Part shown: in pieces, positions 2,280-31,900 of the stretch
Layout: each line of letters starts with the position of its first letter
Numbering within the stretch: position 1 is the stretch's first letter
NCBI RefSeq assembly: GCF_006345805.1
Contig: NC_043012.1
Coordinates: forward strand, 3,224,001-3,288,000
Direction of reading: 5' to 3'
From: Octopus sinensis
Taxonomy: Eukaryota
DNA length: 64,000 nt
Translations under genes and position numbers: made by a program
Notes under the pieces: model-generated
The model's input: the letters and a program-made list of their open reading frames with translations, nothing else
Database searches by the model: none
Told to the model about the DNA's origin: nothing

Positions 2280-2417
2280 CTTTCTGGAATAAACTTATGT
2301 GGTTCTGGCCAGTATTCAGGGTCATGTTGAAGGCTATAAATAGATATGTCTATAGGAATGTCTTTCGGAATTATCCAGTCCTTTATCTTAACAGTTTCCT
2401 TGGCATACCTCTGAAGC
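2280..2417 (-). CDS. CYP left exon 12
   Basis: Identical to right (PER). Confidence 0.93.
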
Positions 2418-5400
2418 CTGTATAAATGAACAATAGGGAAAATTCTTAATTAATTGCAATATTTAATACCTAAGAATAATTCCATAAAATATACAGATAT
2501 ATATATTAAAGCGTCTAGCTGACACAATCATTAACAAAACAAGGAAAATGTTTTGTGTTGGGCAAAATGCTACATTCTGAGTTCAAATTCCTCCAGTCCA
2601 TATTTGCTTTTCACCCTCCCCGGATTCATTAAATAAATACTAGCTGAGCCTTGTGGGCCAATGTAATTGATTTACTGATCTCTGAAATTGCTGGTCTTGT
2701 ACCAAAATTTGAAATCAATGTACAGATATATTTACACATCAAAAGCAATAAAATATATTCCCATATTTTAGCAAACTCTTGAAAGTAAATGAAGTTAAAA
2801 TTATTGACTCAGTACTTAAACAGAGTTTTGATCACTATATATTTGAAGGTGATGGTCTGATATGGACACATCACAGCTGAATCACAGACACAATTCAGAT
2901 ATAATAAGAACACTGGAGAAACTCTTCTAGATTCTCACTTCATGTTTGTCTGAGACTGCCTCAATAATGTACAGACCATAATTGCAATAGAACACAATTA
3001 TAAGCACATCATTACTTCACTTTCGTTTGATAATGTAGCATTCTCTTTGAGACAGGAATATGAACTTATACATTTTATGCACAGGATGTTCTGTTATTAG
3101 GGCAATGACTGACTATTACATTTATGTTAATAGTAGGCATCTGTCGGTCTTGGGAGACCATGGATCTATGCCTGAAGAAATCATGTCAGCTGCTGATGGT
3201 GATGCAGCACGTGTTGTGGCTGTATAGGCCCACATGTGAGTGGTTGTATAGGCCCACATGAGAGTGGTAATCATGCATACAACGATTGCATTTAAAGAAG
3301 CTTTCTACAGGTGCTACTGGTTTTTCCTTTCATGAAGTGCACTTTTCTTTGGTTGCAAGTTCCTGTTTGTCTTCCACTTGCTTCACACACTTTTGCAATA
3401 TTTGTCTCCAGCATGGCGATCATTTGCAGTCTCCTCCCCTCTCAGAATGTCCAGAACCATCAACTTCATATCTTTCTTGCAGACGTACTTGAAACAAAGA
3501 TGAGGTTGTGCTCTTGTGCCAATGTCCAATTCTCCATACAGGATGTCCTTTGGGGCTCCCCCTGTCTGGCATGTGAAGTACATTTACATTATATCACAAC
3601 AACAAAGTAGATTTTTGCATGTAAACATATGATGTCATAATTTGTTGTAATGAAAGGTTATAAAATTTGGTACTAATATATATTTCTTATGGAACATATT
3701 TTTAAAAATCAATAAGCGGAAGTATTGATATAAATAGGGAGTTACAGAACAGGAGATATGCCATTGCTATTATTATGTATTTGGTAATATTATGTATTCC
3801 TTATGGAACATATTTTTCACACCAAGTGTAGAATATTGATATGAACATTGGTACTATCATACATTCCTTATGCTACTATTATGTTATTTGGTACTGTTAT
3901 GTGTTTCTTATCAAACACATTTTTGGTACTATTGTATATTTCTTGTGGAACACACTTTTCAAAACAATAAGGGAAGAATATTGATACAAATAGGGAGTTA
4001 CAGAATGGGAGATATGCCATTGAATATTGCAGCTTTCCTTTATAATTTTCTCCTCAAAATTGTTCGTTCACTTTTCAATTACTTGCTCTCTTCTCTTAAA
4101 AGAAGGCCATCAACAACAAGTAGTCTTATATCCCTTCTCTATAGTTTTCATTTGTATTTAAGTAGAATATATTCTATTAACAAACCATACAGTTGATACA
4201 ATTTAATGTGGAATATTCCTGATAGTAATAAATAAAATTCATAATGCATCACATTAGCTCACCTCTTTACAACAAACATTATTTAATTATTTCATGCACA
4301 TGTAAACATTGTAACACTACCTGAGTGATGCAGGATACATTCTAAGTAATTCAGACATACACATATCGAGGTAAGTTAGTGTGTTCAAATTTTCAACCGT
4401 AGGTTCTTCCTGCAAACAAATAAATATCAAATTCAATTCATGACACTGATTTGCTACTGAATCATAAATAAAATAAGTGAAATATAAGCATTTAACAAAA
4501 TACAGTTTAGGATTATGTTGATATTAGATTCACAATAGCTACTGTCATTTCCACACTTTTCTGAGTAATCACAATTGTCTTTGTTCATATTTTAATTTTG
4601 CAACCAAAATAATTATTCTATCTATATTAATATCCAAATAATATTAGTGAATATATATATATACACACACACACAAAGCAGTTATATCACAATCACCTCA
4701 GACATATGCAGCTGAGTAGCCTCTATAGTTAGAAATGTATCACTGGCTTAGATAGACTTCTAAAATAATTACTTTAGAAGTCTATCTAAACCAGTAATTA
4801 GTTATAATTAATGCTAAATTTCTCTAAACATTTGTATTCACTATGACTAGAACTTTTAAGTCACAGACAACCAAAATTTTAGAGTCTCATTAGTGATGAG
4901 CTAACCAATTGCAGATCTCTTGCATTATGTCTTAACACAAGTGCAATTCTACAATACAATACATATTACTTGAACTCAAAACTGTTTATCACATAATACA
5001 GCAGTACACATCACTACAACATCTCTGGTTTATGAATTATTCAGGTATTATTAGGTTACTGACTCGCCAGCACACCAGGTGAAATGCTCAGCAGCATTTT
5101 ATCCATCTTCATATTCTGAGTTCAAATTCCACTCAGGTGTTTTTTGCCTTTCATTCTTTCAGGGTTCATAAAATAAGTACCAGCCAAGTACTGGGGTTGA
5201 TGTAATCAACTTAGCCCCTCTCACCAAATTACTGGTCTTGTGCCAAAATCTTAGGGAAACTTACGTCACCAATGACATCCATCACTTCATCATATACCTT
5301 CTGCTGTATTTCTGGCTGAGTGGCAAGGATATATGAAAAAAACGACAACTCAGTTGAAGTTGCGAAGTGTGAAGCAAATAAGAACAACACCACCTGTGCA

Positions 5401-5586
5401 ACAATTTCTTCATCTGTTAAACCTATATTAATAAAAGATGATAAATTGAGCTTATGTTGCTATATAGTAAGATTGAAATATCCTGAACTAAGGATACATG
5501 TACATGTATACGACAGATAATGGATGTACATATGTATTTGTGTTCATTTTTGATTGAACCTAGTCATTTTACACATACATGATAAC

Positions 5587-5636
<50 letters not shown>

Positions 5637-5846
5637 CAAACACATGCTAAAAGAGATGTGAGGAAAAGTAAATAAATATAATTTATGCTATCTCTCTCTT
5701 TTTCTCACTCTCTGTCACACACATACATACAGCAACACACACACTTTCTCCCCCTCCTCTCTCTCAGTCAATCACACACTTGCTAAAAAAAGATGTGAGG
5801 AAAAATGAATTTAAAAAATGTTCAGTCACCCTGTCCCCTACATCTT

Positions 5847-5915
<69 letters not shown>

Positions 5916-8900
5916 CACTCACTTTAAATTTATTATTCAATTTTCAATAAGCTAAAATCTTAAATTATTAATTGACACATTATTAATTAGCATAATAGCA
6001 TAGCCTGGGAAAAAACATGGATTACATGGAAAAATGCAAGCAAGAGAAATAATATTCTTAAGATTATAAATCTGGAAAAGTTCAGGAAAAGTTATTACAC
6101 TTGGAAAAGTTCAGGACAAGTTATTACGTCTAGTAAAGTATAGAACAAGAAAATTTTTACTTAAAATATTGCAGCTAAGGATAAAATCTGAATATTAAAA
6201 ATTATTTGACTTTAATTTACGAACTAACATGATAATTAAAAAACATACCATCATTTTGTTAAAATAGTGACACATTAGATTACTTAAAAAATGAGAGCCA
6301 GAAGTACCAATATTGCTATAGTTTTATGCAAAGTAGAATAGTATATAAGGTAGGTAAATTCATTATGTAAAAAATAGGTATTGGGTCAAGACTGAAAATG
6401 TGAAGTCTTGGCAATAACTCGAGCAAATTTTACTGTAAATTTGTTGTTATACGTAGATTTTACAGTAATATATAATTAATTTTTGCATTATTTTATTTAT
6501 TGAACTAACTAATTATATATTTTTCATAACCTATTTTCAAATTTCTAATTATTAATCAATAATTAAAAAATTGAATTTTTTTGAAGGGTAAAAAGTATTT
6601 TGAGTTATATTTTATTTTTAATAGAAGTAACAAATGAAAGTAATAACTTGAAATACAATTTTTAGTTTTAATAAAAGCTAATATTTTCTAAATCTAAATA
6701 TCCTATTTGAAATTTTATCCTTAGCTGCAATATTTTAAGTAAAAATTTTCTTGTTCTGTTCTTTACGAGATGTAATAACCTGTCCTGAACTTTTCCAAGT
6801 GTAATAACTTTTCCTGAACTTTTCCAGGTTTATAATCTTAAGAATATTATTTCTCTTGCTCCCATTTCCCCATGTAATGAAACTACTGCTTCGTTAGATT
6901 TGTTTCTTCACACTGGCTTGCAACTCAATTTATGAACAGCTATGTTTTCTAAACAGTGTTTGGATGCTCTCTCTGTTGATTTGTTTTCTGATCTGGTTGA
7001 ACAAACAACTACTGTGTTGTGCTGGTTAGAGGACAGATATCATTATTATACCAATACTATCAGCCTTCCTTAGATAACTTAATTGCTTTTGCACATGTTC
7101 ACTCTTATCTGATAAGATTGCCTAAGAACCACTGTTTCTAATATCTACATCTTTCTCTTTCCCACGGACTTGTTTCATTTTTATCTGACATTCTGCTTTT
7201 GCATTTATATCTATAATTGTGTCTGGTGACTGCATTATGTATCTGCATGAGCTCTCCACTAGTTGGCATGAATGTTTCACTGTTCTCATTCTGCTCTCTG
7301 TCATGAGACGCAGAGAGCAGAATGAGAACAGTGTACCTGCTGTGGATCAAATAAAAGGTGAGGTCTGAAATTCCAATACAACAACCAAGTAGAACACAAG
7401 ATATCTGAAGAAGGCAGGAACATACAACAGCTGAAATGTAGTGAAAGCAACAATCAAGATGAGTACACCAGTTCAACTAATGTAAACAGTCAAATTTTAT
7501 ACTGTTTAAGACACCAAAGACCTTACAGGTTTTCATGGTACTGGTGATTAAGACATAATTTCAGACAACTGTTTGTCTGGGTCTTACGGAAGCAGTAAAA
7601 CCATAGCACAGAAAAGCACTACGCACCCTTGTGCATTGGTAAAGATTTTCACTGGCATATGTATTGCCATCAAGCATGCATCATGTGCTTTTTTTGGTGG
7701 TAGTTATAAATTACTATTGTACCTTCATGGTTCAATGATAGATTTCTTCCTAGTTAAGAGATTAGTTCGAGTGAGTGGTACTTATGTGCATACACATAAA
7801 AACGATCATGCACACACAGATATATATATATATATATCAATATACACACACAAATATATATAAATATATGTGTGTGTGTATATCATCATCATGATCATCA
7901 TCATGATTATCATCATTTAACGTCCGTTGTCCATGCTGGCATGGTTTGGACGTTTGACTGGGCTAACATGCTGGAAGGCTGCACCAGACTCAAGTCTGAT
8001 TTGGCATGGTTTTCTACAGCTAGATGCTCTTCCTAATGCCAACCACTCCGAGAGTGTATTTGGGTGCTTTTATGTACCACCAACATGGGCACCTAAAATA
8101 TGGTATCCACACCCAATATTGATTTTCCATCTTTGATCTCATTGTTGTTTACATGAGGCATGAGGGATATGAAATGTCAGAGCAAAATAAGTGCTGGCTG
8201 TATTTTCTACAGAAAATCTCTAGAGATAACCTTAACCTTAAGTGATGTAGTAGCACTGCTAACACAGTAGAACACAGGATTGACTTATCAAAATGTTTAA
8301 TATACTTTGTAGTATATTATGGTTGCATAATGAAATATGGTGTGCCCACAGATCATTACTATTCATATTTAGCTGATGAGACACAAAACTCTAATGTATT
8401 AGAATATTTATTTTATCAGATCTTAATAATGCCCAAATATTCTCACTGAGATCCATTATAGATTATTGCTCACATATCAAATATGGTGCTGGTACTACTA
8501 CACACACACATATATAGACATCCTAAACATTGTCCACAAAAAGGTCACCCAACTCACAAGCAGACTCCAGCCTCTGAAGCAAAGACATGCTGAGTTATAT
8601 TCCTCAGCTTTTCCTTTTGCTACTAAAATAATTCTTGCTTCTTTGAGCATCTCCTCTGAGCATTTCCGATTTACTCATTTCTTTTTCCCTCTTTCTCTGC
8701 CCAACCCCAATAGATCCAACACTAGTTATTGTGCCTTCAAAATCCCTTCCCTGATCATGTATTTTCTGCAGATGTTGATTTGCAAAAGTCATTTTCACTC
8801 TGTTCTATGTACACACTGACATTACCCTTCCAATGGAGCATACTGGCTTTACTTCCTTCAAGATTTGCATGTCCTTTGTAGTCATAGCCCATGTTTGACA

Positions 8901-11900
8901 GCCATGTAGCATAGCTGTACATACACAGGCATCATACAATCTGCCTTTCACTTTGAGGGAGAAGTGCTTTGTTACCAACAAATGTAGTAGCTCTTAGAAC
9001 TTTACCCGGCCTATTCTTACTCTAGCAACTATGCTTTTAGAGCTTCCTCCATCACTGCTAACTTGGTCTCAAAGGTAACAGAAGCTATCTACTACTTCTA
9101 AGGATTCCTGGGCATTGCAGGAAGTCTGTTCTCTGCACATTCTCAGTGTTTATTGTACCCACACATTTGCTACACACAAATCTATTTTCTCTGTTAAACT
9201 TCCCATGACACCACTACACCTTCAATGTGTTCAAAGCTTGCACTAAGTAGTTTCTACTAACACATTTCTTACATATTGAGCAGGGCTGTCTCCTTGAAGG
9301 GATTTGTGATTCATCTGTTTTCCCACTTAATAAGGCTTTGGTCTTTTCTCAGTGAATTTCTGCAGAATACTGCATCTAAAGCGTTCATATATATTTTGTA
9401 TATCAAACCTATATTTCAAATAATCAAAATTTACTTGCCTCTTTTTGACCTCCAGTCACTCATGTTCTCAAATGTGAGTGTTTCCAGTTCGTGTTTCATA
9501 TCATCATCAATTTTATCAACATTTTCAAGTTTTGCATCCAACAAAAGTTGGAGAAAATCATGTCTTACCTAAAACCAACAAGAAAATCTAGAAATATTAA
9601 ACAGCTGAATAAAATTACTGAGGTTTTAATATAAATATTAGGCATTCTAAGTACTAATTTTAGAAATATCCAATCACTGGATTTTACTGGTAGATTTTTT
9701 TGGACAAGTGGAACATTACTATGAATGAGATGTATATTGTGATATGGCAAAATTGCGTTTTGGTATTCTATAGACATATGATGAACAGAGCAGTAACATA
9801 GAAAACTCCTTTTCAATTTCTTGTAAATTCAGTTAAATAGAAACTGTAATAAGGAAATGCAGAACATATATTTCATATTTTTCAGTAGACAGTATATAAT
9901 TCTAATTCTCACTGTCTAATCTCATTTCCTCACTAGAAAAAAATGTTTTTCTTGCTGGTTATAAAAAACATTTTAAAACACATTGACTGAAAACATACTA
10001 TGAAATGCTCAATAACATTAAATAAATTTCAAATATTACCGTTTTATTTTTTCTCCGTTCTGCTATAACATCTTTGGAAAACATAGAGATAGAGTGCAAT
10101 GAACTGGAAAAGTTAGTGTTGATTCCGAAAGTACCCAGAATTTTTGGAATTACTGGAAATAACACTGAAACAACAAATGCACAGGCTAATTAGTACAGTT
10201 GATTATATTGGCGATAAAAATTTGTATTCCATGTAATAAACCAATAAACCTTAGCAGTTTTCTTGAAACGAATGATATACATGTTAATAAATAAACTCAC
10301 TGATCAAAACTAGAAACTTATTGAGAGTTCCTTTGTTTTTAGTGAAATCAACAATCAAAACAGATCCAAATGTTCTCAACAAGCTTACGTTCTATTTCAG
10401 ATGAAACTGTTTTTGCCTGTTTTGTGTTGATTTTGTAGAGGTAAATATTGTAAATGCAATGAAAGATAGGCTAGGTGCCTTGCTATCTCTAGATTTGTTC
10501 AATAGAAAGTGGAATTTTCTGGAGAGAAAACAAAAGGCTTCAATTTAAGACTTTCTAGAGAGTTTCAAAAGGTTAGTGTTGTATAATTCATGTACCTGAA
10601 GAGTGAAGTGCAATGATTTATTTATATATAAAGCCGAAAAAGGAGCTTAATTTCAGATTATTTTGTGACCAAAATAAAGGGATATTGTGATATTATCTGT
10701 GTTATTAGGCATCATTGATCAGAGCAGAACACCTGAGCACAGGAGTGCTCATTCCAACCTGTTATCTGCCCATATAGACAGGTGCACCAACATATAGCAT
10801 AGATAAATTAACAACAACTAGCTGAAGCATCGTTCAGTGAGAGATAAACATAACTGCAATGATGTCTGAGTTTGGCTTTTCTTTCTTTTCTGTATATTTA
10901 TCATAAATACAGTCTTTTATCTAATGTATAGAGGTTAAAATTTACACACACACGCGTACAGAAACTCATTTAAACATACATCGATACAAGCACACACATG
11001 ATGTGTGTCACTGCAATACACACAGTTAGCAACAATGAGGTCATATTCATTCAATAACATATCTTAAGAGAATAAGTAAATATTTACTTTGAACAGAAGT
11101 GATCGGGTCATAAAAATTGACATAAAAGAATTTGTCAAAGCATTTTATTAATGCATGATCTGGATTCTTCTGTGAATTAACTTCGATGCCAAACGCAGTA
11201 GATGCAATCATATCAACTGTGTAATGTGAAAATACTCTGAAATGAAAATAAAGAAATAAGAAACTAAAATAATACTAAAACTCACTTTGTTCTGCTCTTT
11301 TAAATACATTTTAATTGGGAACTATTGTTGTGCATTGAGTACATTTTAAAACAAAAGCTATGCTACTAGTATGTGACGTGATGGTATAGATTCAATTTAC
11401 AGGTTAAATTATTTCACATATCTTACATTGATAATAATTATTGGAAATGTATCAATTCCAGTTTTTCTCTCCAAATACAAAGCTATCATGCATAGTGAGA
11501 AAGACATGATTTCTTTTTTCCTGCTTATTATAAAATTAACAAATTGCTTGTAATTTTTCACTTCAATGGGTCAAATACCTACACTGGTGCTTTTTGGCAT
11601 AGACAGTACAATCCTTACTCTGCCTCAGAATGCTGAACCTTTCAGAAAGAGATGACAAAGGACCAAGATACCTGGCACCTTGCTGTACTCAAGAAGACCT
11701 ATCCTCCACAGCAGAAGTGTTATGGTAGCATTCGCTGGTGAAGGGGATTGGCCTGCAAAAGTCCTGTGCGGTTGCCATATAAAAGCAATTGTGTTGGTGC
11801 CATGCTAAAAGCACCCTACACACATTGTAAAGTGTTTGGCATTAGGAAGAGTATCCAGCTGTAAAAACCAAGCAAAATCAGACTGGAACCTGGTGCAGCT

Positions 11901-14900
11901 CTCTGGTTTGCAAGCTTTAGTCAAACTGTCCAACCCATGCCAGCATGGAAAATGGACATTAAAGAATGATGATGATGCTATAATAGTTTATACAAACATG
12001 GTTGTGTAACTTGGTTAAGGATAAACACTTTATTTGACATCAATACATAAACACTCTTACATACTTACACATAACAACAAGAACAACACAAAAGTAAATC
12101 AGTTTAAACAGAGTCACTCACTGTTTCATTTCAACAGCTTTGTCACTGTCAGCAAAAAGAGAAAAGTTTTCTTCCAGGTTTTTCACAACACTATTCATAA
12201 TTCCCATTGTCTGAAAGAAATTGAAATTCCCAAAATTGTTCTTATTCTTTTCTCATGGTTTTAGTTTTACTGCTGTAGACGTTTAAGACAGTTGATTTTC
12301 TAATAATTCTTGAAAATATGATTCATGTTATCTCCTCATTTTAACAATTCTCACAACATCTACGGTCTACATTGGTCTTCTGACAGAAGCTAGTTGTTGT
12401 ATACTATCTCTGCTTAATGCCACATGAAACACCTCCTCTTGTCACACCTACTGTATCTTTTCTTTAAGAGCTGCACTAACCATTCAGTCCAATAGCTTTC
12501 CCAGTGAACCAATAATCTGGAATTCATTTCCTACCCTTCCTTTCCCATCAGTCATTGAATTACTGAAATACATTAATACCTCAGGTCGTTGAAAGCCAGC
12601 AAACATTTGTAAAGATCAATCCTCCTAATTAGGCCATTAGAAAAAAGGTATATTAATTAGTTGAATCAAATTCATTCTCCCCAACACAATTATAAAGTTA
12701 TGTAATTGACATAAATAAATGTGGTGAAATCTTATGATGAAAATGTATATCTTATAGGCTTTTATTAAGTCAATGTGTCAGCATTGAAGACTTTCTCCAT
12801 ATAGTATATGGAAAATAAGCTTGGTAGCAACAATATCTGAGTTTGCTGTAAAGAGGAGTCTTGCCCTGACACAACAGATGCTCTTTGTAAAACTATTAAC
12901 ATTATGATTTGTTAGATAATTACAGCTTATTACCTTTAACCAAAGCTATAGAGCCTCTTGTTTATCAACTAATGATTCAAGGAAAGGAAAAATAATATTT
13001 AAATGTATTAACAACATATTTTTAATTTAGAATAAGAGGAATATAATTTTCATTAAAATTAAGACTATATGAAATTAAATAGAATTGATCTTACCTGTTT
13101 TAAGTGACTGGTACTGAAGGTTGGGAGTAGTACAGTACGGGTAAATTTCCAATGATTGTCTTTGAGAAAACTTATGAATCGATCACTAATTTTGTTTTGT
13201 GGCAATACATCCTATAAAGAACATGTGACATCTGATCAAAGTGAACACACCATGAAGAAGACATTACAAAGAAATAATTCCATCTTACTTTGAAATGAAA
13301 ATAGAGAGAAAAGAGGAGAAATATGTCACATTTTGTGGGGAAAATGAGAAAAGTCAAAAAGATTTCTGAATCTGCAAATCAAATTTTGGTGAGGATAATC
13401 CACTGACAAACAACATTGTCAGTGAATAAAATCTTTTTGCATTGGTAAAAGCTATAGTCATATTAGCTTAATAACCAAGTAATTGAAAATCAATGATCCT
13501 GGTAATTGATGAGGACCTAGAAATTAACCCATTACCCTAGGGTCATGGCAAATGCTTTGTCATCTCAGACATGTACAAAGTTTATTCTAAGAACCATGAA
13601 TGATGATTAAACAATTTAGTGTTGTTGAATTTTATCAGCATTGCTATCAGAGATGATATGACCATGTTTACTGCTAGAAGTCTGGAGGGAAGCTTCAATT
13701 GATTCCATCAGCCTTTATCTTGAACAAGTGTAAAGAAAGATGTTTATGATAAATGCATGTTTATCATGGCCAGAGGATTATACATGTCATAATAATCCAT
13801 ACTGATATCCTCACTCACAAACACTTCTCGCCTGATACAATCATCCCATCACACTGATGCAATTGGGAGAGGAATTGAATTTTCACAAGTGTAACTTCAG
13901 TTACTCTCATCCCTGGTAATTACTATGATCAACACACAAATCCTCCACATACACTTGATGTTTCTTTCATTTACAAACCCAACCTCTGCCATATCAGACA
14001 CTAACTTTGTATCAATTTAGTGGTAAGAGAATTATATATCTCATAATAACCCATAATAATCCATCATCACTCACAAATACTTCTTGGTTCTCACATTCAT
14101 CTGAATATGCTGATAATGCTAGTGGAGTAACTGAATATTTTACATTTGTAAATCTTTTACATCAGTTAGTTTTGTCTTCAACAATTGTCTCTTTTCAACA
14201 CGTGAATACTTCAAGTACCATCAATTTAGTTTTCAGCCACACGCCCAACCACTGCCAAACCAAAATTGACTCTGTTCCCATCTCAAGGCAAGGTCTCTTC
14301 CTTATCACAACTACCCATTACATATCTATGTACTATGCATCTATCCTCAGATCTCCAACTCCATAACATTTCAAGTCAACTGGTTCTACAATTCATATTC
14401 TAAATATGCATGATGACACATGTACTTGTAACCTATCAGAAACAACTCATCTTTTCACTGAAACCATCTTCTTCAGTATATTTCTCCACATCCCACACGC
14501 AACGAAATTTCATAATTTTAAGTACCCAAAATCATTCACTCATTTTGGGCTATGCCACAGAATTTCAGCAGAGAAAATGACCTAGGCACAAACAGAATGG
14601 AAACTCTCATAATCAACAGACTTCTCCAACATGAATATCTCTCACTCCTTATTTAACGTTTGTGCAGTTTTCTTATGGCCAACTCAATGGGAGAACTTCC
14701 CTCTTATGCTATTCAGCTGTAGGTCCACATCTTATTGAAAATCTGTTAATGAGGCAAGAAAAGAAAGCTTATGTTATTTAGATGCATGCCTGGATGTAAA
14801 ACATCTTAAATTTTAAAAAGTAAACTTACGTATCTGTTTGTAAATACAGCAAATTGTTTGATGCAAATTTCTTTAACCATTTCTGGGTCACTGATGAGTA

Positions 14901-17900
14901 TATGAGGTTGATTACAAATGTAAAATCTGTAAAAGTAAGAAAACATAGGAAAATTACAATTCAAATTTTCATATCTGTTCACAAAATTGCATTGTATATC
15001 TTCCGGAACTTATAACATGATTGGTTTTTGTGTCGACAGGATGGACAGTAAAATGTCCACAACACTATCTGCATCAAAAAAAGTGACTGTTAGCATATTT
15101 AAAGTTGGAAATAAAACAATTAAGAAGAAATAACTATAAAAGAATAGAAGAAAATATTTACTAAAGATTAAAATTAAATGAAATTAAATAAAGCTACATT
15201 TCTAATGGAACAACAACGATCAATGATTAATAGAAAATATGAGAGAAACAGAGATATCACTGGCAATACAACTGCACTGGACACATGGTCATAAATCCCT
15301 GACACTGTTACCAAATATGTAAGGACATGCATGTGTATGTATGTGGTGTGCATGTGTTTATGATCCTGTGAGTGTGGAAGCATTCCAGTATGTATATGTA
15401 TCCAGGCTATGGACAAGGAGCCAAATCAGGCACTGCAGTTGATGTGACCAGCCACATTAACACTGACACACACACACACACACTGAGAAAGGCTAAAGAG
15501 CTAGAAGCGTGCATGTGGGAATCTGCTAGATGGAAGCACTGAATTGATATGGTGTTTTTACACCTTTTATCATAAGAGAGAATTATTTTCCTCCATGGTG
15601 ACTGCAGTGAATTTGCCTTTTGAAGCTGAAATATGTGGCAAAAATATTTTAACTAAATTAAGGTTCATCTATTCCTAATCACTGCCTCGTGCTGATACTG
15701 CTATTTTCATTCCATCCACTCGTGCAAGGTAGTCACTGATGTTCACTGCATTATTTGGTTAAAGCTATGGCTCTGAATTTGCCTAGGGTTATGTCTCTAG
15801 GGTATTTCCCTATTGAGGAGGGCTAAAGAACCAGAAAAGAGCCAGAAATGTGCTTATGATAAAAGGTTTTTACACTTTTAACATAAGAGAGAATCTTTTC
15901 CCCATTGCAACTGCAGTGAATTTGCCTTTGTAAGTTGGAATGTGTCACTAACATATTTTAACTATCCTAAAATTCATATTTATCTATTTTCATGACCCCA
16001 ATTGCACTTCAAGAGGAATAAACAATAAATGTACACACTTAGTCATCACATCAGAATGAGATATAAACTGTTTAAAATGTTCGTACCCTAATACTTTTCC
16101 ATATTTCTGTTTCATTTCTTTGTCAAACTTTGCCATTCCCTAAAAAAGAATAACTAAATTACAATTTCAATATAGAAAGGTTTAAATACTTGTTTTTTCA
16201 CTCCTCCAAGATAATATTTTTATGAATAGTTTTGTATTAATAAGCAAATCTAGTTTCATTTACATAAAGATCCAATCACAATATTATTATAAAGAAACAA
16301 AGTAAAGAAAAAAAATTAATGGAGTGGGAGGGATTAAGCAGCAGAAAATGGGTGTGTGGAGAACACTTCTGGAATAAAAGAGTACAATCAAATTCTGCCA
16401 CCATTGACTTTACATTTCACCCTTTTAGGGTTAATAAAATAGGTACCAATCAAACACAGGGGTTGGGGTGGGGGAGAATAATCGACTAATCCCTCCCCAA
16501 AATTACTGGCTTTGGGCCAAAATTTGAAATCAATATTATACACACACACATACACACACACTCACATATAAACCAAGAAAATGAAGAGTTTCTACTGGTT
16601 GGTAAATTTTAAAAAGTACAAAGAAGAAAATGCTCCAGTATGACCACAGCCATATGACTGACACGAATAAAAGAATACTATTTTTTGTAGCATTTGTAAG
16701 TTTCTTCATGGGATATCATGCGCTCAAATATGTGCATTTCTAAATTACAAAGTGTGTACAGCTCAAAATAACTGCAAATTGGGACCTTGAAATTTCCTTG
16801 AAATTTCCGTGGCTGATAAGGAAAATGCTAAAACTTATGTAAACTATTAAAATGTGAGAATTTGACATCTAACCAGTAACTGTTAGTGCATTGGTACACA
16901 TTGAATTCTAATTTATACTTTTGCACCAGAAATATACAATACAAGCGATGTGCCACTCTTCGTTGCGGCAACCCCCGCGTAAGTCTCCATGACCGAGGGT
17001 CGACGCTCCTTCTATAAAAAGTAACGACACACAGCGACAAGAGACTCGTGCAATTCGATCCTGTTCCATCTCTTTCTACAATTTTTCACTTTTTATTTTC
17101 ACTCTTTCACACAATAATAACGTCTGACTCTGACAGCAATACATCAGGTACTCAGTTGAAGCATCTTTCGAGAAAACAGACATTACATACAGCTAAACTT
17201 CATATAGATACTTAATGCTAGCTAATTAGCAAATAATCTTATGTAAAAGCCGTGCACAGCTCCATCTGGACTATTCCATTTCTGCACTTAAATTTTATTT
17301 TTTTATTTATTCCCATTCCTGTGAAACCACTTATTCAAGTTCAAGTCATTGATGCGATTTTATACCAATAGCTATTTTTACTTTTTTTATGTTACGATAA
17401 TATTATACTTTAGTTTGATTTTAATTATTACTTACTACATATAATTCAATTGTTATTGTGAAAGCATCTGACATAAAATAGAGAAATGTTTTTGTTTCAC
17501 TTTTAACACATTATACTGAAATAGTGGAGAAGATATGATATGGCTATGGGCTCGCTCTAGGTAAGAAGTTGAACATTTTTCTTGCCCATGAAACTACATG
17601 GACCCTAAGTAAGGCATCTGTAAAATTTGAATGAAATTGGTTGTGTAGTTCTCAAGTTTTAGGGAAACACACAGACAGACAGACACACATTCTCAGTTTT
17701 ATATATAGAGAGATATTCTAAGAATATGAGAAAGACTGATTTTCCATAATATTTATCCCCAGGGTGTGAAGTGAAGCCATTGCTTTTAATATTAAAACAT
17801 GGATCAAGGCAGTGACATGGCAGAATCATAACCATGCCAGGCAAAATGTTTAGTGGCATTTCATCTGTCTTCATGTTCCAATTTCAAATTCCAATGAGGT

Positions 17901-20900
17901 TGGCTTTGCCTTTCATCCTTTTGGGATCGATAAAATAAGTACAAGTTCAATGCTGGGATCGATGTAATCAATTCATCCCCTCCCCCGAAATTGCTGGCTT
18001 TGTACCAAAATTTGAAATCAATATTAAGACATGGATCAAGGCTGCAAGCTGGCAGAAACCTTACCATGCTAGGCAAAATACATTTCATGTGTCTTTATGT
18101 TCAGAGTTCAAATTCTACTGAGATTGATTTTGCCCTTCATCCTTTAAGGGTCAATAAAATAAGTACCAGGTGAACACTGAAACACTGGCTTTATGCCAAA
18201 ACTTGAAACCAATCTTAAGACATGGAGCGAAATAGAAAGGAAATGCGAGGTTGTAATTTCCTGTTTTCAATGAGGGCATAAGAAGTGTGAAAGGATGGAA
18301 TTGTTTGCAAGGGTGAAAACTTGTAATTTCCCTTCTGGATCATTGATACGTGCTTAAAAAATTCTTTTCAAATTGTTATGTAGGATGATGGAGTTCTATA
18401 AGTGAGGAAAAATGTCAAATTGAATTGTTCCCAGTGTATTACTGGTACTGATTTTACTGAATCAAAATGATAAAATACCAATCATTAAACCTTATTGTTT
18501 AAAGTAAAGAGTAAGATTATATAAAAATAACAAGAAATAAATAAAAAATATCTACTTTAATAAATGCCAAATCAACACCGACAACAATTATGTTTAGAAT
18601 GCTGAGAAACCAATCACAATGCAAAATTTTAACTACCGTATACACTCGCAGATAGGTCACACCCTTAGTTTGGGGTTGTCAAAGTAGGTCACACTATAAT
18701 CTGAGGAGTTACAATGGCCCCCTTTATAACGTAAATATAACTAATATTTCTTAAACATTATCAAATATACATCTTTATTTCAAAACTTTGCTTATAAATA
18801 TTAAAACATTTTGTGGAAGTGACTTTATGAAGGTAGTCTGATTGATAAATCTACTTCACCATTGATACACTGCCATCTACTTCAGATAAGTTGCAGCCCT
18901 GATTTTATCAAAATTTTTGGTAAAAATAGTGCAACCTATATGCAAGTATACATGATAACTTTTATGTCATTCAGCTATCTAAGTCTATCAAACAAGGTAC
19001 ACATAGGGTATGAAAAATTCCAATGCCACCTACCTTCTTCATGAGTTGTAACATATTTCCAAAAAAGAACCATGGCTCTGGGCCAGGAATATTGATGTTT
19101 TTGAAGTAATCATATGGTTTTTTTGCCAGTCTAATATGTAATTGAAAAAACATTGCATTTAAGATTATTGTAGATAAATACTGTTTATAAAATTTAGAAA
19201 TACTCGAACTAAAATAATTAAACTAGTTTATAATGGAATATAAAATAGATTCAATCATATAAATGCACTCACTGCTTTCGATTTGAGAAATGTTGAAATA
19301 TGAGATTTATCCATTGTGTTGTTTTAGAAGTGTGCACTTAGAATTTACAAAATCTACTGACATTATTAACCTATATCTTTCAGTGAGAAAGTGGTCTGTT
19401 CATAAAAATCTCAAAGTATTATTTGAGTAATGATAAGTCATCATCATTACTATTGCCAATTAAAGTTTGTTCTCCATGCTGGCATGGGTTGGATGTTTCA
19501 GCAGGAGCTGGCCAGCTACAGCACTTGCCAGTTGGAGGGCTGCCTGAACTTGTTTATCTGTTTTAGGCATGGTTTCTATGGCTTTACAGAGTGTACTGTG
19601 TGCTTTTAACAGGATACCGGCTCGAGTGCTCTTACATGGCACCGGCTTGGATGTTCTTACATGGCACCAGCTTGGATGTACATTTATGCAGTAGTGGCAC
19701 ATGTGTTTATATGTGGAACTTGGATGGGCACTCTTATGTGTCACTAGTACGGGTGCTTTTATGCAGCCCCAGCACCTGCGAGTCTGCGAGAGTAGGATCT
19801 CTTAGCTGAGAGACGGATGTAAAGGACAAGCCTGTATGTATGGATGGCCACAATTTTACTTAGCTTCATGCGTCTTGCCTAGCACAATACACTGCTTAAT
19901 GTCTCAGTCCCTTGTTGTCCCTTCAGTGAAGCCCAACATCTGAAGATCCTTTCTCAAAATTTCATCCCACATGTTCCTTCCTCAGTTAGAGATTAGCAAT
20001 TCTTGATGCAGCTGTCCTCGTCCATATGCATCATATGTCCATATCAGCACAATCTTATCGTTCACTACATCTAATGTTTTATATACCCAACTTTTTTTTC
20101 CAATCACTTACACCATCATACATGCACACTGACATTACCCATCCAGCAGAGTATGCCGGATTCATTTCACGTGTTGTCAGTGGTCACAGCCCATGTTTCA
20201 CTGCCATGTGGTACACTGGATTTCAAGGATTGCCAGAATGTTCTGAAATGTTTCTCAAACAGACTTCTTTCATTGGATTTATAATTTCCAACCATCTACA
20301 ACAGGTATTTTTTGAGTAATTCGAATATATTTCGACATATACATTAATTCTTGCTTTAAGAGTTTAGACAGTAGCTAAAATGAATGTTAGATAAATACAT
20401 AGGTACAGTGCTGGCCTATAATGGATGAAATTGTTTAAAGAAATGCAAAACATTAGCTTCTAACTTCTCTCACAAAAGTCAAGACAAAACTGTTTATAAA
20501 CTAGTGTAGTATCATGACAGGGTATTTTATGCTCAACAGCATGTTTGATATGCATATTATATAGTAGAAGATTAGCATATTCAGAAGGCTCATCATCGTT
20601 TAACGTCCGCTTTCCATGCTGGCATGGGTTGGACGGTTTGACTGAGGACTGGTGAGCCAGAGACCACACCAGGCTCAATCTGATCTGACAAAATTTCTAC
20701 AGCTGGATGCCCTTCCTAACGCCAACCACTCTGAGAGTGCAGTGGGTGCTTTTACGTGCCAGCAGCATGAGGGCCAGTCAGGCGGTTCTAGCAACGACCA
20801 TGCTCAAAAGGTGTTTTTATGTGCTACTCACACAAGAGCCAGTCCAGCGGCACTGACAAAGACCATGCTCGAATTTTGTTTTTCATGTGCCACCAGCACA

Positions 20901-21535
20901 TGTGCCAGTAGAGTGACACTGGCAATGATCACACTCGAATGGTGCTTTTCATGTATCACTGACATAGGAGCAAATTCATGGCCCTGGCAACGATCATGCT
21001 CAGATGCACTTTTAACATTCCACTGACACGAGTGCCAAGCAGTCAGTACTGTCATAAACACAGATAGCGTAGACTCTTGAGTGCCACGATATGTCCTTAC
21101 TAATAGCGTTAGAGACCTAATGGAGAGAAATTTATTTTATCTTGGAATGAAATTTGCCCGTAAACTCCGTATTCTGTCGTGCATTGCAGTAAGAGGTGGA
21201 CAAAAGTGTGTAGAAAGTGAACTCATAGAATTAACTCTTAGAACATTTTAATAAATTAGCTTTTAAATTAGCTTATAAGTATAAACAATTAATTGATATT
21301 TAAAAATGGTCATAGTGAGTATAGAAACTTTAGTCGTAATGAGAATACAAATGCTTTAGTAATAACGTTAGTATAAATATTTTAGTAATTTAGTTGGTAA
21401 AAGATTTTACAATTCGAAGTTTGTGTAATTTTTTTCTGAATAAAAAGTTGATAAATTTACTTACATATATAATAGCAGAAGAACAATTGAGAGGAGAACA
21501 CAATTCGGTATAGTAAAGAAGCTGAGGGTATCCAT
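2280..21535 (-). CDS. CYP3A-like: Cytochrome P450, clan 3 (CYP3A-like), left copy; exons 1-12 open; exons 13-14 not in window
   Basis: Exons (minus): 21535-21465, 19130-19034, 16139-16087, 14926-14830, 13211-13095, 12210-12122, 11236-11088, 10164-10040, 9568-9439, 5422-5265, 4409-4321, 2417-2280. Frame is open throughout and splice sites mirror the right copy. Confidence 0.92.
3135..3600 (-). mobile_element. RTE-like LINE 3' fragment (mirror at ~53545-54010)
   Basis: PKDILYGEL...CKKDMK C-terminal RT-adjacent motif. Confidence 0.65.
4321..4409 (-). CDS. CYP left exon 11
   Basis: Identical to right (ELLR). Confidence 0.92.
5265..5422 (-). CDS. CYP left exon 10 (I helix, FLFASHFATSTEL)
   Basis: 158 nt, open frame through ATQPEIQQKVYDEV. 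Confidence 0.92.
5588..5910. repeat. (CT)n microsatellites with a duplicated ~45-bp unit
   Basis: Direct reading. Confidence 0.85.
6021..6878. mobile_element. Foldback/MITE-like element with ~170-bp imperfect TIRs (left arm only)
   Basis: 6021-6190 is the inverted complement of ~6712-6878; short internal repeats tggaaaagttcagga. Confidence 0.7.
8650..9260 (-). mobile_element. LINE RT fragment (mirror at ~49550-50180)
   Basis: Degenerate FCYLGDQVS...KVKGRLYDACV...LHG reading. Confidence 0.7.
9439..9568 (-). CDS. CYP left exon 9
   Basis: Identical to right, same GC donor. Confidence 0.87.
10040..10164 (-). CDS. CYP left exon 8
   Basis: 9 nt / 7 aa differences from right. Confidence 0.88.
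11088..11236 (-). CDS. CYP left exon 7
   Basis: 3 nt / 2 aa differences from right. Confidence 0.92.
12122..12210 (-). CDS. CYP left exon 6
   Basis: 2 nonsynonymous differences from right. Confidence 0.88.
13095..13211 (-). CDS. CYP left exon 5 (DVLPQNKISDRFISFLKDNHWKFTRTVLLPTFSTSHLKQ)
   Basis: Same length and splice sites as right; 12 aa differences. Confidence 0.92.
14830..14926 (-). CDS. CYP left exon 4
   Basis: Identical to right exon 4. Confidence 0.92.
16087..16139 (-). CDS. CYP left exon 3
   Basis: Identical to right exon 3. Confidence 0.9.
16942..17713 (-). mobile_element. Non-autonomous Helitron, intron 2 (left copy)
   Basis: 5' TC(TC)TATATATAAAA, (ctgt)n, 3' hairpin then CTTG|T. 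Confidence 0.7.
19034..19130 (-). CDS. CYP left exon 2
   Basis: Identical to right exon 2. Confidence 0.92.
21465..21535 (-). CDS. CYP left exon 1
   Basis: Identical to right exon 1. Confidence 0.9.

Positions 21536-22798: not shown

Positions 22799-22845
<47 letters not shown>

Positions 22846-25698: not shown

Positions 25699-25699
<1 letters not shown>

Positions 25700-25781
<82 letters not shown>
25700..25781. repeat. (TA)n microsatellite
   Basis: Direct reading; also 22798-22843 and 51168-51212. Confidence 0.95.
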
Positions 25782-25785
<4 letters not shown>

Positions 25786-26273: not shown

Positions 26274-26314
26274 GTCTGCATTTACTTTGAATGTGTAACC
26301 ACTCTTATATTTTA

Positions 26315-26880: not shown

Positions 26881-26884
26881 CTGC

Positions 26885-31869: not shown

Positions 31870-31900
<31 letters not shown>

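What the first reader, a model, noticed from the sequence alone, without database searches (positions are those of the whole stretch)
13095..13400. Exon 5 (SRS1) hot patch: 12 of the first 24 residues differ, then identity resumes abruptly
Seen: left DVLPQNKISDRFISFLKDNHWKFT vs right (44010-44081) DMFPPDRVGDKFLSFLTDLHWKFA. That is 19 nt differences in 72 nt, 2 of them synonymous; the remaining 45 nt of the exon are identical. Flanking introns show raised divergence (about 6 differences in the first 80 nt downstream, plus an indel of ~27 bp upstream). Established: this segment aligns to CYP3A4 ~107-126, the B'-C loop. Inference: either a selection-protected divergence peak or a patch converted in from a third paralog.
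Basis: partly seen in the sequence, partly recalled or inferred. Interest (0 to 1): 0.74.

Follow-up and report, generated by a model that had tools for sequence, protein, structure and literature searches.

The report
Octopus P450 twins: protected pocket patch
Two back-to-back copies of an octopus detoxification-type enzyme gene (cytochrome P450) are almost identical, except for short stretches that shape the substrate pocket; the largest stretch has been kept different in two octopus species while the rest of the gene was repeatedly copied over, a clear example of a known way in which duplicated genes acquire different jobs.

Summary
Exon 5 of two head-to-head CYP3-clan genes (Octopus sinensis, CM016874.1) differs at 19 of its first 72 nt (12 of 24 residues) and at 0 of the last 45. 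The arm background is 1.6% (P ~ 1e-17).

The patch aligns to CYP3A4 P107-L129 (B-C region, SRS1). It is the largest of three clusters; the others lie in exon 8 (F'-G) and exon 10 (I-helix).

Related genomes decide the interpretation:
- O. bimaculoides has a single copy. Its patch matches the left copy at 8 differing sites and the right copy at 11, interleaved, with no change of its own. Both copies are therefore derived.
- O. vulgaris carries both patch types (2/67 nt within a type, 17-19/67 between types). All 16 informative sites group by type across species. The far flanks group by species or palindrome partner.
- An intronic island sheltered by type-specific insertions shows 9% neutral divergence between types. 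The 1.6% arm divergence therefore reflects gene conversion.
- Nonsynonymous change in the patch exceeds the neutral yardstick (P = 4e-4).

Verdict: a selection-protected, adaptively diverged SRS1 island in a gene-converting inverted pair. It is not a one-off import from a third paralog. This is a new member of a known kind, of moderate interest.

The parts
13095..13211 (-). Exon 5 of the left copy (gene XP_036365728.1, 'L-type')
   Evidence: Splice sites and frame; identical to protein P0271.
13142..13208 (-). Left version of the hot patch (VLPQNKISDRFISFLKDNHWKFT); 11 changes derived relative to O. bimaculoides
   Evidence: 2/67 nt from O. vulgaris copy B.
44010..44126 (+). Exon 5 of the right copy (gene XP_029646589.1, 'R-type')
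   Evidence: identical to protein P0152.
44013..44079 (+). Right version of the hot patch (MFPPDRVGDKFLSFLTDLHWKFA); 8 derived changes; aligns to CYP3A4 F108-L129
   Evidence: 2/67 nt from O. vulgaris copies X and A.
43948..43978 (+). 31-nt segment present in the right copy (and in X, A and O. bimaculoides) and deleted in the left copy; O. vulgaris B has an overlapping 49-nt deletion with the same left edge
43823..44197 (+). Full type-specific block around the patch, shoulders included: upstream sites 43823, 43854 and 43906 are shared by R and X; downstream sites 44177-44197 are shared by L and B
2280..21535 (-). Left gene, exons 12 to 1 (exons 13 and 14 lie beyond the left edge of the window). 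Open frame, all splice sites intact.
   Evidence: complete 516-aa product P0271.
30709..59161 (+). Right gene, exons 1-14 with stop codon; sits at the ancestral position and orientation relative to the TPR neighbour
1363..23958 (.). Left arm of the inverted repeat (interrupted by private insertions)
29610..55799 (.). Right arm of the inverted repeat
23959..29609 (.). Unique spacer between the two promoters
48657..48738 (+). Second cluster, exon 8 (left copy 10164-10083): 9 differences, 8 of them left-derived; aligns to CYP3A4 T224-R250 (F'-G, SRS2/3 region)
51776..51798 (+). Third cluster, exon 10 (left copy 5372-5350): 5 nonsynonymous differences in 23 nt, 4 left-derived; aligns to CYP3A4 G306-V313 (I-helix oxygen-binding motif, SRS4)
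51159..51433 (+). Intron 9 island (left copy 7889-7612), cut off from the long homology blocks by type-specific insertions: 9.0% type-fixed divergence at 178 unique sites. Used as the neutral yardstick.
29610..29830 (+). Innermost arm segment (left copy 23958-23739), separated from the left arm by a 1363-nt private insertion (22376-23738): 9.3% substitutions
51825..51826 (+). One-base deletion in exon 10 of the right copy (the left copy reads CTTGCCACT), leading to TGA at 51863-51865
   Evidence: the annotated protein P0152 reads the shifted frame.

Best explanation
The window holds two head-to-head (inverted) copies of a CYP3-clan cytochrome P450 gene of Octopus sinensis. The right copy sits where the single gene of O. 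bimaculoides sits. The left copy is the derived inverted duplicate. The duplication dates from about the time the O. bimaculoides lineage split off, and well before O. sinensis and O. vulgaris separated. Since then, gene conversion between the copies has kept nearly all of the ~22-kb arms alike (1.2-2.6% divergence). Three short coding stretches have escaped this. They encode substrate-contacting parts of the enzyme: SRS1 in exon 5, the F'-G region in exon 8, and the I-helix in exon 10. In the exon 5 patch both copies moved away from the ancestral sequence (11 and 8 changes in 67 nt), mainly by amino-acid-changing substitutions at about three times the neutral rate. The single-copy species did not change at all there. 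The two resulting versions have since been conserved as distinct 'types' in both O. sinensis and O. vulgaris. The proposed mechanism is that conversion tracts covering the patch would erase a useful difference in substrate pocket and are removed by selection. Tracts that stop short of it are neutral and trim the divergent block down to the selected codons, leaving sharp edges and low 'shoulders'. Shown here: the anatomy, the polarity of every change, the sharing of types across species, the homogenised flanks, and the nonsynonymous excess. Inferred: that the two types differ in substrate range, and that selection rather than chance has kept conversion out.
For: Anatomy: inverted arms; 14-exon gene models; P450 family, E = 4e-96; CYP3A4 the closest solved structure, E = 1e-94, with the patch at P107-L129. 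Outlier status: 19/67 against 1.58% background, P = 9e-18. Polarity: O. bimaculoides has one copy and matches one or other version at all 19 sites (11 left-derived, 8 right-derived, 0 of its own) in 8 interleaved runs, so it is not a recombinant. Types across species: L and O. vulgaris B differ at 2/67; R and O. vulgaris X or A differ at 2/67; between types 17-19/67; 16/16 informative quartet sites give LB|RX. Homogenised flanks: L, R, X and A lie within 0.4-1.7% of each other, and informative flank sites group as LR|XAB or LRB|XA, that is by species or by palindrome partner. Old age at neutral sites: the intron 9 island has 16 type-fixed differences in 178 sites (9.0%), again LB|RXA; the innermost arm segment has 9.3%; and there is a 962-nt identical run against a simulated 95% maximum of 497. 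Selection: patch Nd 15.25 over 59 sites against the 9% yardstick gives P = 4e-4, while synonymous Sd 3.75 over 13 sites is compatible with it (P = 0.03-0.33). The paralog branches carry N:S = 32.8:5.2 and the species branch 57.2:32.8, Fisher P = 0.010. All nonsynonymous differences fall in exons 5, 6, 7, 8 and 10, and none in exons 1-4, 9, 11 or 12. Shoulders: 12 substitutions in 383 nt beside the patch, against 0.5% further upstream. Ancestral position of R: the O. bimaculoides intergenic segment is split between the far side of L and the promoter side of R.
Against: The right copy carries a frameshift in exon 10 in this assembly. If real, one partner is now a pseudogene and present-day selection to keep two working types would be moot, although its O. 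vulgaris orthologue X is intact. The 34 nt immediately upstream of the patch and the 47 nt immediately downstream are identical between copies. A simple linkage model predicts the highest neutral divergence there (P ~ 0.03 for 0 in 34 nt at 10%), so one must invoke splice-signal constraint or repeated trimming. The neutral yardstick rests on one 178-nt island, with a rough interval of 5-14%; at 14% the nonsynonymous excess is only P = 0.02. O. sinensis and O. vulgaris differ by only about 1%, so sharing of types between them shows persistence over a short time only. No functional or expression data exist. The locus history is not fully resolved: the left copy matches O. vulgaris A in its 5' half and B in its 3' half.
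Confidence: 0.75

Rival explanations
1. One-off ectopic gene conversion: one copy received the 67-nt tract from a third, more distant CYP paralog, and the other copy keeps the original sequence.
For: The tract length (67-130 nt) is typical of conversion tracts and the edges are sharp. Synonymous divergence in the patch is about 18 times the arm background (pS 0.29 against 0.016; P = 0.018 for at least 2 clean synonymous differences). The left lineage holds 3 of the 3.75 synonymous changes. A third copy with the left-type patch exists in O. vulgaris.
Against: Both versions are derived relative to O. bimaculoides (11 and 8 changes, interleaved), so neither is 'the original'. The window has no third copy. 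The O. sinensis locus has no further CYP gene within 10 kb on either side. Apart from these two genes and their O. vulgaris and O. bimaculoides counterparts, the closest protein found is 46% identical, too distant to donate a tract only 8-11 nt from the ancestral sequence. O. vulgaris B shares the left copy's 3' flank up to the TPR gene, so it is the orthologue and not a donor. A distant donor would offer no intron homology for a tract that starts 3 nt into the exon.
Confidence: 0.08
2. Young duplication without any gene conversion: the arms differ by 1.6% because the duplication is recent, and the patch arose through an extreme burst of positive selection, or a clustered mutational event, in both copies.
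For: Arm divergence (1.6%) is only slightly above the O. sinensis-O. vulgaris divergence in the same region (0.6-1.7%). The differences in exons 8 and 10 are all single-hit and nonsynonymous. The right copy has a three-base run change, AAT to TTA.
Against: Neutral intronic sequence sheltered by type-specific insertions is 9% diverged between types, and the innermost arm segment is 9.3% diverged. Type-specific transposon insertions and rearrangements are shared across species. Palindrome partners X and A in O. vulgaris share derived sites, and A carries R-type patches although its 5' half is L-like, which shows conversion or exchange between copies. Seventeen or more substitutions in 67 nt, including synonymous ones, within about 1% of neutral time would need a 25-50-fold acceleration.
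Confidence: 0.1
3. Relaxed constraint: one copy (the right one, with its frameshift) is a decaying pseudogene, and the patch is accumulated damage.
For: Frameshift in exon 10 of the right copy. dN/dS within the patch is about 0.9.
Against: Decay would be spread evenly, yet six of twelve exons have no difference at all and the differences cluster in pocket-forming segments. Both versions are conserved between species at 2/67. The intact left copy carries more derived changes than the frameshifted one. The right copy's O. vulgaris orthologue X is intact.
Confidence: 0.03
4. Assembly artefact: the two 'copies' are haplotypes wrongly joined as an inverted repeat, and the patch is an allelic polymorphism.
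For: Divergence of 1.6% is in the range of heterozygosity in marine invertebrates. I had no read data.
Against: The independent O. vulgaris assembly has the same head-to-head pair (X on the minus strand directly upstream of A) plus a third copy, and holds both patch types on one chromosome. Each arm carries private kb-sized transposon insertions, and the two genes have different 3' neighbourhoods. NCBI annotates both genes.
Confidence: 0.02

Closest known systems
Vertebrate CYP1A1/CYP1A2 (bird CYP1A5/CYP1A4) head-to-head pair
   Same: Two P450 paralogs in head-to-head orientation across a spacer (23 kb in human). Region-specific gene conversion homogenises some exons while other segments, including substrate recognition sites, stay diverged and set substrate specificity (PMC3199271, which cites Goldstone and Stegeman for 'intense inter-locus gene conversion' in chicken).
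   Different: A different P450 clan (clan 3 here, not CYP1). The octopus pair is far more alike (98.4% including introns; CYP1A1/1A2 share >80% of amino acids). Here introns and flanks are homogenised too, so the locus is a true palindrome, and the divergent islands are much shorter (23-82 nt). In mammalian CYP1A, SRS1 is among the converted regions (PMC3199271); here SRS1 is the protected one.
Selection maintaining paralogous differences under gene-conversion pressure (Teshima and Innan 2004; Takuno and Innan 2009, yeast heat-shock genes; both cited in PMC3199271)
   Same: A narrow divergence peak centred on selected amino-acid sites, a low homogenised background, shoulders of linked divergence, and persistence of the two states across species.
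   Different: That is a population-genetic model with a few worked cases, not a gene family. The octopus case adds three peaks in one gene, each on a pocket-forming segment, and an outgroup showing that both copies are derived.
SRS-focused divergence of duplicated P450s (Gotoh 1992, cited in PMC6082832; insect CYP6ER1 duplicates, PMC9249207)
   Same: Amino-acid change between recent P450 duplicates concentrates in substrate recognition sites, including the I-helix [A/G]Gx[E/D]T[T/S] motif, and can create new substrate specificities.
   Different: For CYP6ER1 the functional effect was demonstrated by transgenic assays and involves only a few residues in SRS4/5. Here nothing has been tested and SRS1 carries 12 replacements.
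Large palindromes with arm-to-arm gene conversion, such as primate sex-chromosome palindromes (from my own knowledge, not checked here)
   Same: Inverted arms with a unique spacer, near-identity maintained by intrachromosomal conversion, and genes within the arms.
   Different: Those arms are typically >99.9% identical, with no known selected islands of divergence. The octopus arms are small (~22 kb), 1.6% diverged and interrupted by private transposon insertions.
Primate CYP2D6/CYP2D7P/CYP2D8P (PMC4419802)
   Same: A clustered P450 gene and pseudogene set in which the interplay of conversion and SRS constraint has been analysed.
   Different: By its title, that study reports purifying selection on the SRSs without frequent or long-tract conversion. 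The octopus pair shows diversifying change at the SRSs together with extensive homogenisation.

Membership tests
Cytochrome P450 (Pfam PF00067) | Significant match to the P450 profile over the whole catalytic domain | tested here: met
   E = 3.9e-96, 323 bits, profile positions 2-440 of 462.
Cytochrome P450 (Pfam PF00067) | Heme-binding cysteine motif FxxGxRxCxG | tested here: met
   FGIGPRMCIG at window 56949-56978 in the right copy. The left copy's heme exon lies outside the window but is present in its product P0271.
Cytochrome P450 (Pfam PF00067) | I-helix oxygen-binding motif [A/G]Gx[E/D]T[T/S] (as given in PMC9249207) | tested here: not met
   Right copy AADLTT, left copy ASHFAT, O. bimaculoides AAHLTT. 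All three lack the acidic residue, and the left type also lacks the threonine. This is a conserved signature, not a strict membership criterion.
CYP3 clan / CYP3A-like | Closest characterised relatives are CYP3A enzymes | tested here: met
   The best solved structures are CYP3A4, 3A7 and 3A5 (E = 1e-94 to 1e-85); the next family is CYP4B1 at 2e-36. Databases name the octopus proteins '3A24', '3A7-like' and '3A8'.
CYP3 clan / CYP3A-like | More than 40% identity for the same family and more than 55% for the same subfamily (P450 nomenclature rule, from my own knowledge) | tested here: not met
   Identity to vertebrate CYP3A proteins is 33-40%. It is a clan-3 member but not a member of subfamily CYP3A, so the database names are only by similarity.
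Inverted-repeat (palindromic) gene pair homogenised by gene conversion | Two inverted arms of high identity around a unique spacer, each containing a gene copy | tested here: met
   Arms 1363-23958 and 55799-29610, spacer 23959-29609, 1.2-2.6% substitutions.
Inverted-repeat (palindromic) gene pair homogenised by gene conversion | Arm identity higher than the age of the duplication allows (evidence for conversion) | tested here: met
   Sheltered neutral segments are 9.0% and 9.3% diverged, against 1.6% in the arms. There is a 962-nt identical run. Flank sites group by species or palindrome partner. In O. vulgaris, copy A has been overwritten with R-type sequence. The evidence is indirect; no conversion event was observed directly.
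Selection-protected divergence island under gene conversion (Teshima-Innan type) | Sharp divergence peak on coding sites within a homogenised background | tested here: met
   28% in 67 nt against 1.6%.
Selection-protected divergence island under gene conversion (Teshima-Innan type) | The same two states retained in each paralog across species | tested here: met
   16/16 informative sites give LB|RX; 2/67 within types. Caveat: the two species are only about 1% apart.
Selection-protected divergence island under gene conversion (Teshima-Innan type) | Amino-acid change in the island faster than neutral | tested here: met
   Nd 15.25 over 59 sites against a 9% neutral yardstick, P = 4e-4 (P = 0.02 at 14%). 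N:S on the paralog branches against the species branch, P = 0.010.
Selection-protected divergence island under gene conversion (Teshima-Innan type) | The two states differ in function, and hybrids are less fit | not testable with these tools
   This needs enzyme assays and population data.

The most novel reading that the evidence does not exclude
The locus may capture the contest between gene conversion and selection in progress. In O. vulgaris a tandem third copy (B) keeps the left-type pocket. The copy that faces X across the palindrome (A) has been overwritten with right-type sequence from just upstream of exon 5 to at least intron 9, and has then taken a ~385-nt insertion inside exon 5. 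This would mean the patch is erased as soon as a back-up copy relaxes selection. In addition, the left type has lost both the acid and the threonine of the I-helix oxygen-activation motif. It may therefore no longer be an ordinary monooxygenase but a P450 with altered chemistry, as in the clan-3 relative thromboxane synthase. The three protected islands would then mark a change of reaction and not only of substrate.
Probability: 0.2. Interest if true: 0.62.

Novelty: new member of a known kind. Interest (0 to 1): 0.42.

Why it matters
This is an unusually clean natural example of how duplicated enzyme genes keep a few functionally decisive codons apart while recombination keeps erasing every other difference. 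It offers three short islands, each on a pocket-forming element; a single-copy outgroup that polarises every change; and a sister species with a third copy that serves as a natural control. For cephalopod biology it identifies a lineage-specific pair of clan-3 P450s, a type associated with xenobiotic or lipid metabolism, whose substrate pockets diverged quickly after duplication. The 12-residue SRS1 swap is a ready-made design for chimera experiments. For annotation it shows three things: the reference model of the right copy reads through a frameshift; the O. vulgaris model fuses two genes; and the 'CYP3A' names are only by similarity.

Tried and rejected
1. The first protein search used a 92-aa chimera of the exon 5 and heme-exon peptides and found nothing. 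This was a false negative of the word index: the full-length query later found proteins containing both peptides exactly.
Run with the contiguous heme-exon ORF, it gave only relatives of 64% identity or less. One of them (P0033) hinted at real relatives but was too distant to polarise the patch.
3. Rfam found no RNA family in the window.
4. I first read the end of left-arm homology at 1363 as truncation of the left copy. That was wrong: a mariner-like element sits there, and the gene continues off the window (P0271).
5. RNA-editing 'hard-wiring' (A in the left copy, G in the right at 7 of 19 sites) was considered and dropped, because 9 of the 19 differences are transversions and polarisation shows changes on both lineages.
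6. An O. bimaculoides patch that is a recombinant of the two types was rejected: 8 runs among 19 sites, against about 10 expected for random interleaving.
7. I considered whether the sharp 5' edge of the patch is an unequal-crossover junction of a hybrid left gene. It is not: the same edges appear between O. vulgaris B and X.
8. A cDNA-mediated conversion was considered and dropped because intron 4 is retained.
9. A non-coding hot spot at 36287-36535 lies next to a 170-nt tandem repeat and is probably misaligned repeat units.
10. Structure prediction was not run.
11. Whether O. sinensis lost a copy by A/B fusion or O. vulgaris gained one by tandem duplication could not be resolved, because the transposon markers conflict.
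Full report
OBSERVATION. The window is 64 kb of Octopus sinensis chromosome CM016874.1 (assembly GCA_006345805.1): a locus fetched for the annotated protein is identical to the window over 43,292 of 43,292 overlapping bases. A self-comparison shows a large inverted repeat: left arm about 1363-23958, right arm 55799-29610, unique spacer 23959-29609. Each arm carries a copy of a 14-exon cytochrome P450 gene, arranged head to head. The left copy lies on the minus strand, with exon 1 at 21535-21465 and exon 12 at 2417-2280. The right copy lies on the plus strand, with exon 1 at 30709-30779 and exon 14 at 59084-59158. Exon 5 is 117 nt (13211-13095 and 44010-44126). The two copies differ at 19 positions, all between 44013 and 44079, and at none of the remaining 47 nt. 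Non-exonic divergence between the arms is 269/17025 = 1.58%, and the next-highest 72-nt window in the same aligned block holds 6 substitutions. The patch is therefore an extreme outlier (P = 9e-18). The upstream indel is 31 bp (43948-43978), not ~27. The downstream intron has 5 substitutions and an indel in its first 71 nt.

WHAT THE GENE IS. The spliced product matches Pfam p450 at E = 4e-96. Its closest solved structures are human CYP3A4, 3A7 and 3A5 (E = 1e-94 and weaker), with the next family at 2e-36. Identity to vertebrate CYP3A proteins is 33-40%, so this is a clan-3 P450 and not a member of subfamily CYP3A. In the HMMER alignment the patch corresponds to CYP3A4 P107-L129. That is the B-C region containing F108 and S119 (residue roles are from my own knowledge), and identity resumes at R130 of the WxxxR motif.

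EXON 5 IS NOT ALONE. Comparing all exons gives 38 differences in 1241 aligned exonic nt (exons 2-12; exon 1 is identical). Half of them are in the patch. The other 19 are almost all nonsynonymous (Nd 17.5, Sd 1.5). They fall only in exons 6, 7, 8 and 10; exons 1-4, 9, 11 and 12 are identical. Two further clusters stand out. One has 9 differences in 82 nt at the start of exon 8 (CYP3A4 T224-R250, the F'-G region). The other has 5 differences in 23 nt of exon 10 (CYP3A4 G306-V313, the I-helix oxygen-binding motif). CYP3A4 residues 218-223 are labelled SRS(2,3) and residue 293 'start of SRS4' in PMC6082832. Differences in the other exons are richer in transversions than intronic differences are (13:6 against 102:167, P = 0.014).

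THE PATCH HAS A DIFFERENT HISTORY FROM ITS SURROUNDINGS. Within the 24 codons, synonymous divergence (3.75/13 = 0.29) is as high as nonsynonymous (15.25/59 = 0.26). Four codons carry two or three changes. At the arm rate one expects 0.2 synonymous changes (P = 0.018 for the two clean ones). Point mutation plus selection on a 1.6%-old duplicate therefore cannot explain the patch. It is either older than its flanks or imported.

IS THERE A DONOR IN THE WINDOW? No. tblastn with both proteins finds exactly two copies of exons 2-12 and one heme exon. The left arm appears to end at 1363 only because a degenerate mariner-like element (Pfam Transposase_1 and HTH_48) is inserted there and runs off the window. 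The left gene is complete in the genome: its product XP_036365728.1 is 516 aa with its own heme exon.

OUTGROUP. A full-length protein search found the Octopus orthologues, and their loci could be fetched. O. bimaculoides has a single copy with the same 14 exons. A TPR-repeat gene lies upstream, and neither 10-kb flank contains CYP exons. Its introns align well. At 8749 intronic or flanking sites, 7.6% are 'both O. sinensis copies alike, O. bimaculoides different', 0.8% are left-specific and 0.7% right-specific. Exons show 6.9% of the first class. In the patch the picture reverses. O. bimaculoides has no change of its own (about 5 expected). At each of the 19 differing sites it agrees with one of the two copies, giving 11 left-derived and 8 right-derived changes. 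These are interleaved in 8 runs, so it is not a recombinant of the two. Both versions are therefore derived from an O. bimaculoides-like ancestor. This alone argues against a single import into one copy. The clusters in exons 8 and 10 are mostly left-derived (8:1 and 4:1). The changes in exons 6 and 7 are right-derived.

SISTER SPECIES. O. vulgaris has three copies on one chromosome. X lies on the minus strand, head to head with A; B follows A in tandem; and the TPR gene comes next. A six-way alignment of exon 5 with 700-nt flanks shows that the left-type patch is carried by O. sinensis L and O. vulgaris B (2/67 apart). The right-type patch is carried by O. sinensis R and O. vulgaris X and A (2/67 apart). 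Between types there are 17-19 differences in 67 nt. All 16 informative quartet sites in the patch support (L,B | R,X), and 15 sites are strictly (L,B | R,X,A). The shoulders lean the same way. R and X share derived states at 43823, 43854 and 43906. L and B share states at 44177-44197, and both have a deletion starting at the same base upstream of the exon. In the far flanks L, R, X and A lie within 0.4-1.7% of one another. The few informative sites there group as LR|XAB or LRB|XA, that is by species or by palindrome partner. This is the pattern of concerted evolution around an old, conserved difference.

A NEUTRAL YARDSTICK. Two arm segments are cut off from the long homology blocks by insertions private to one type. 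The innermost 220 nt (23739-23958 against 29830-29610) shows 9.3% substitutions. An island in intron 9 (7612-7889 against 51159-51433) has 16 type-fixed differences in 178 unique sites (9.0%), again grouped (L,B | R,X,A). O. bimaculoides sides with the left type at 12 of these and with the right type at 4, and has 8 changes of its own. Beyond the island's edges the two types carry unrelated sequence that is shared across species. So at neutral sites the types are about 9% apart, roughly the O. sinensis-O. bimaculoides distance. The duplication therefore dates from about the time of that split, and the 1.2-2.6% divergence of the main arms must come from homogenisation. A 962-nt perfectly identical run (simulated 95% maximum 497 nt) fits this. 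So does the state of O. vulgaris copy A. Its 5' half and upstream flank are orthologous to those of the O. sinensis left copy (98.3% over 15.9 kb, including a 1363-nt insertion). Yet from just upstream of exon 5 to at least intron 9 it carries right-type patches, the right-type island and the right-type 1.6-kb intron 7 insertion.

SELECTION. Against the 9% yardstick the patch is still threefold too diverged (P = 2e-5). The excess lies in nonsynonymous changes (15.25 against 5.3 expected, P = 4e-4). Synonymous changes are compatible with the yardstick (P = 0.03 for at least 4, 0.33 for at least 2). At the upper plausible rate of 14% the nonsynonymous excess remains at P = 0.02. Branch by branch over exons 1-12, the two paralog branches carry 32.8 nonsynonymous and 5.2 synonymous changes. 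The species branch carries 57.2 and 32.8 (Fisher P = 0.010; P = 0.031 without the patch). In the single-copy lineage the patch did not change at all, while each duplicate changed at 12-16% of sites.

MECHANISM. Shown: an inverted duplication inserted a second copy (L) between the TPR gene and the ancestral gene (R). The O. bimaculoides intergenic segment now lies partly beyond L's 3' end and partly next to R's promoter, and R keeps the ancestral orientation. Exchange between copies has homogenised the arms. Three short coding islands, all on pocket-forming elements, have stayed apart and are conserved as two types in two species. Inferred: the islands confer different substrate ranges (or chemistry). 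Conversion tracts that would overwrite them are eliminated by selection, while tracts ending outside them drift to fixation and trim the divergent block to the outermost selected codons. This would explain the sharp edges (both outermost differences are nonsynonymous) and the weak shoulders.

CAVEATS. (i) The right copy lacks one C after 51825 and runs into a TGA at 51863. The reference protein model simply reads the shifted frame. The O. vulgaris orthologue X is intact, so this is either a very recent pseudogenisation or an assembly indel. (ii) The 34 nt upstream and 47 nt downstream of the patch are identical, which is more than simple linkage predicts. (iii) The yardstick rests on short segments. 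(iv) O. sinensis and O. vulgaris are only about 1% apart. (v) The left copy matches O. vulgaris A in its 5' half and B in its 3' half and downstream flank. I could not decide whether O. sinensis fused A and B or O. vulgaris duplicated L. This does not affect the patch edges, which look the same in the B-X comparison.

COMPARISON WITH WHAT IS KNOWN. The closest documented system is the vertebrate CYP1A1/CYP1A2 pair, which lies head to head 23 kb apart and shows region-specific gene conversion (PMC3199271). The population-genetic frame is selection maintaining paralogous differences under conversion pressure (Teshima and Innan; Takuno and Innan; both cited in PMC3199271). Concentration of change in substrate recognition sites of duplicated P450s goes back to Gotoh 1992 (cited in PMC6082832) and has functional examples in insects (PMC9249207). 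The octopus locus is a new and very tidy member of this kind. It is not a new kind of system.

VERDICT. Novelty: new member of a known kind. Interest is moderate (0.42).

Noticed in passing
window 51825-51865 (+), exon 10 of the right copy: One C is missing relative to the left copy (CTTGCCACT becomes CTTGCACT), which shifts the frame into a TGA 13 codons on. The NCBI model XP_029646589.1 reads the shifted frame (...YILALSQKYSRRYMMK) and then rejoins exon 11. O. vulgaris X, O. bimaculoides and the left copy are all intact here.
   Followed up: partly
window 51776-51798 (+) and 5350-5372 (-); also L001 exon 10: All the octopus copies lack the acidic residue of the I-helix motif [A/G]Gx[E/D]T[T/S] (right AADLTT, O. 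bimaculoides AAHLTT), and the left type also lacks the threonine (ASHFAT). This is unusual for an oxygen-activating P450 and may point to altered chemistry.
   Followed up: partly
window 1-~1340 (-): A degenerate mariner-like transposon (Pfam Transposase_1 9.6e-27, HTH_48 3.9e-18, internal stops) lies in intron 12 of the left copy and runs off the window. The same element is in intron 12 of O. vulgaris copy A (L002 28554-29614). It explains why arm homology appears to stop at 1363.
   Followed up: yes
L002 ~15920-16295 (O. vulgaris copy A): A ~385-nt insertion sits inside exon 5 directly after its first codon, with a 3-nt insertion a little further on. Copy A is probably a pseudogene, and the annotated O. 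vulgaris protein CAI9733871.1 (697 aa) is a fusion of copies A and B.
   Followed up: partly
window 31191-36240 (+): A 5-kb insertion private to intron 1 of the right copy (absent from the left copy and from O. vulgaris A). It contains an ORF (31996-32397) with a weak zf-RVT match (E = 3e-4, below the Pfam cut-off), so it is probably a non-LTR retrotransposon remnant.
   Followed up: partly
window 46592-48193 (+): A 1.6-kb insertion in intron 7 is present in the right copy and in O. vulgaris A but absent from the left copy and O. vulgaris B. Its first ~580 nt belong to a repeat family that also occurs at 17172-17715 and 39568-40111.
   Followed up: partly
window 22376-23738: A 1363-nt insertion in the left copy's upstream flank is shared with O. 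vulgaris copy A but absent from the right arm and from B. It isolates the innermost 220 nt of the arm, which has diverged to 9.3%.
   Followed up: yes
window 49382-49387 (+) and 9438-9433 (-): Intron 9 uses a GC-AG splice pair (donor GCAAGT) in both copies.
   Followed up: no
window 38933-39895 against 17388-18350 (approx.): A 962-nt run of perfect identity between the arms, about twice the longest run expected for evenly spread differences. It is probably a recent conversion tract.
   Followed up: partly
window 36287-36535 against 21009-20760: A non-coding stretch with up to 13 substitutions per 50 nt lies beside a 170-nt tandem repeat (35962-36301) and the edge of the 5-kb insertion. It most likely reflects alignment of non-equivalent repeat units, not a real divergence island.
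   Followed up: no
window 29273-29608 and about 9-10 kb left of the window (L005 40793-41876): The O. bimaculoides intergenic segment between the TPR gene and the P450 gene (L001 7550-8671) matches O. sinensis on both sides of the left copy plus spacer. This is consistent with the inverted copy having been inserted into that intergenic region.
   Followed up: partly
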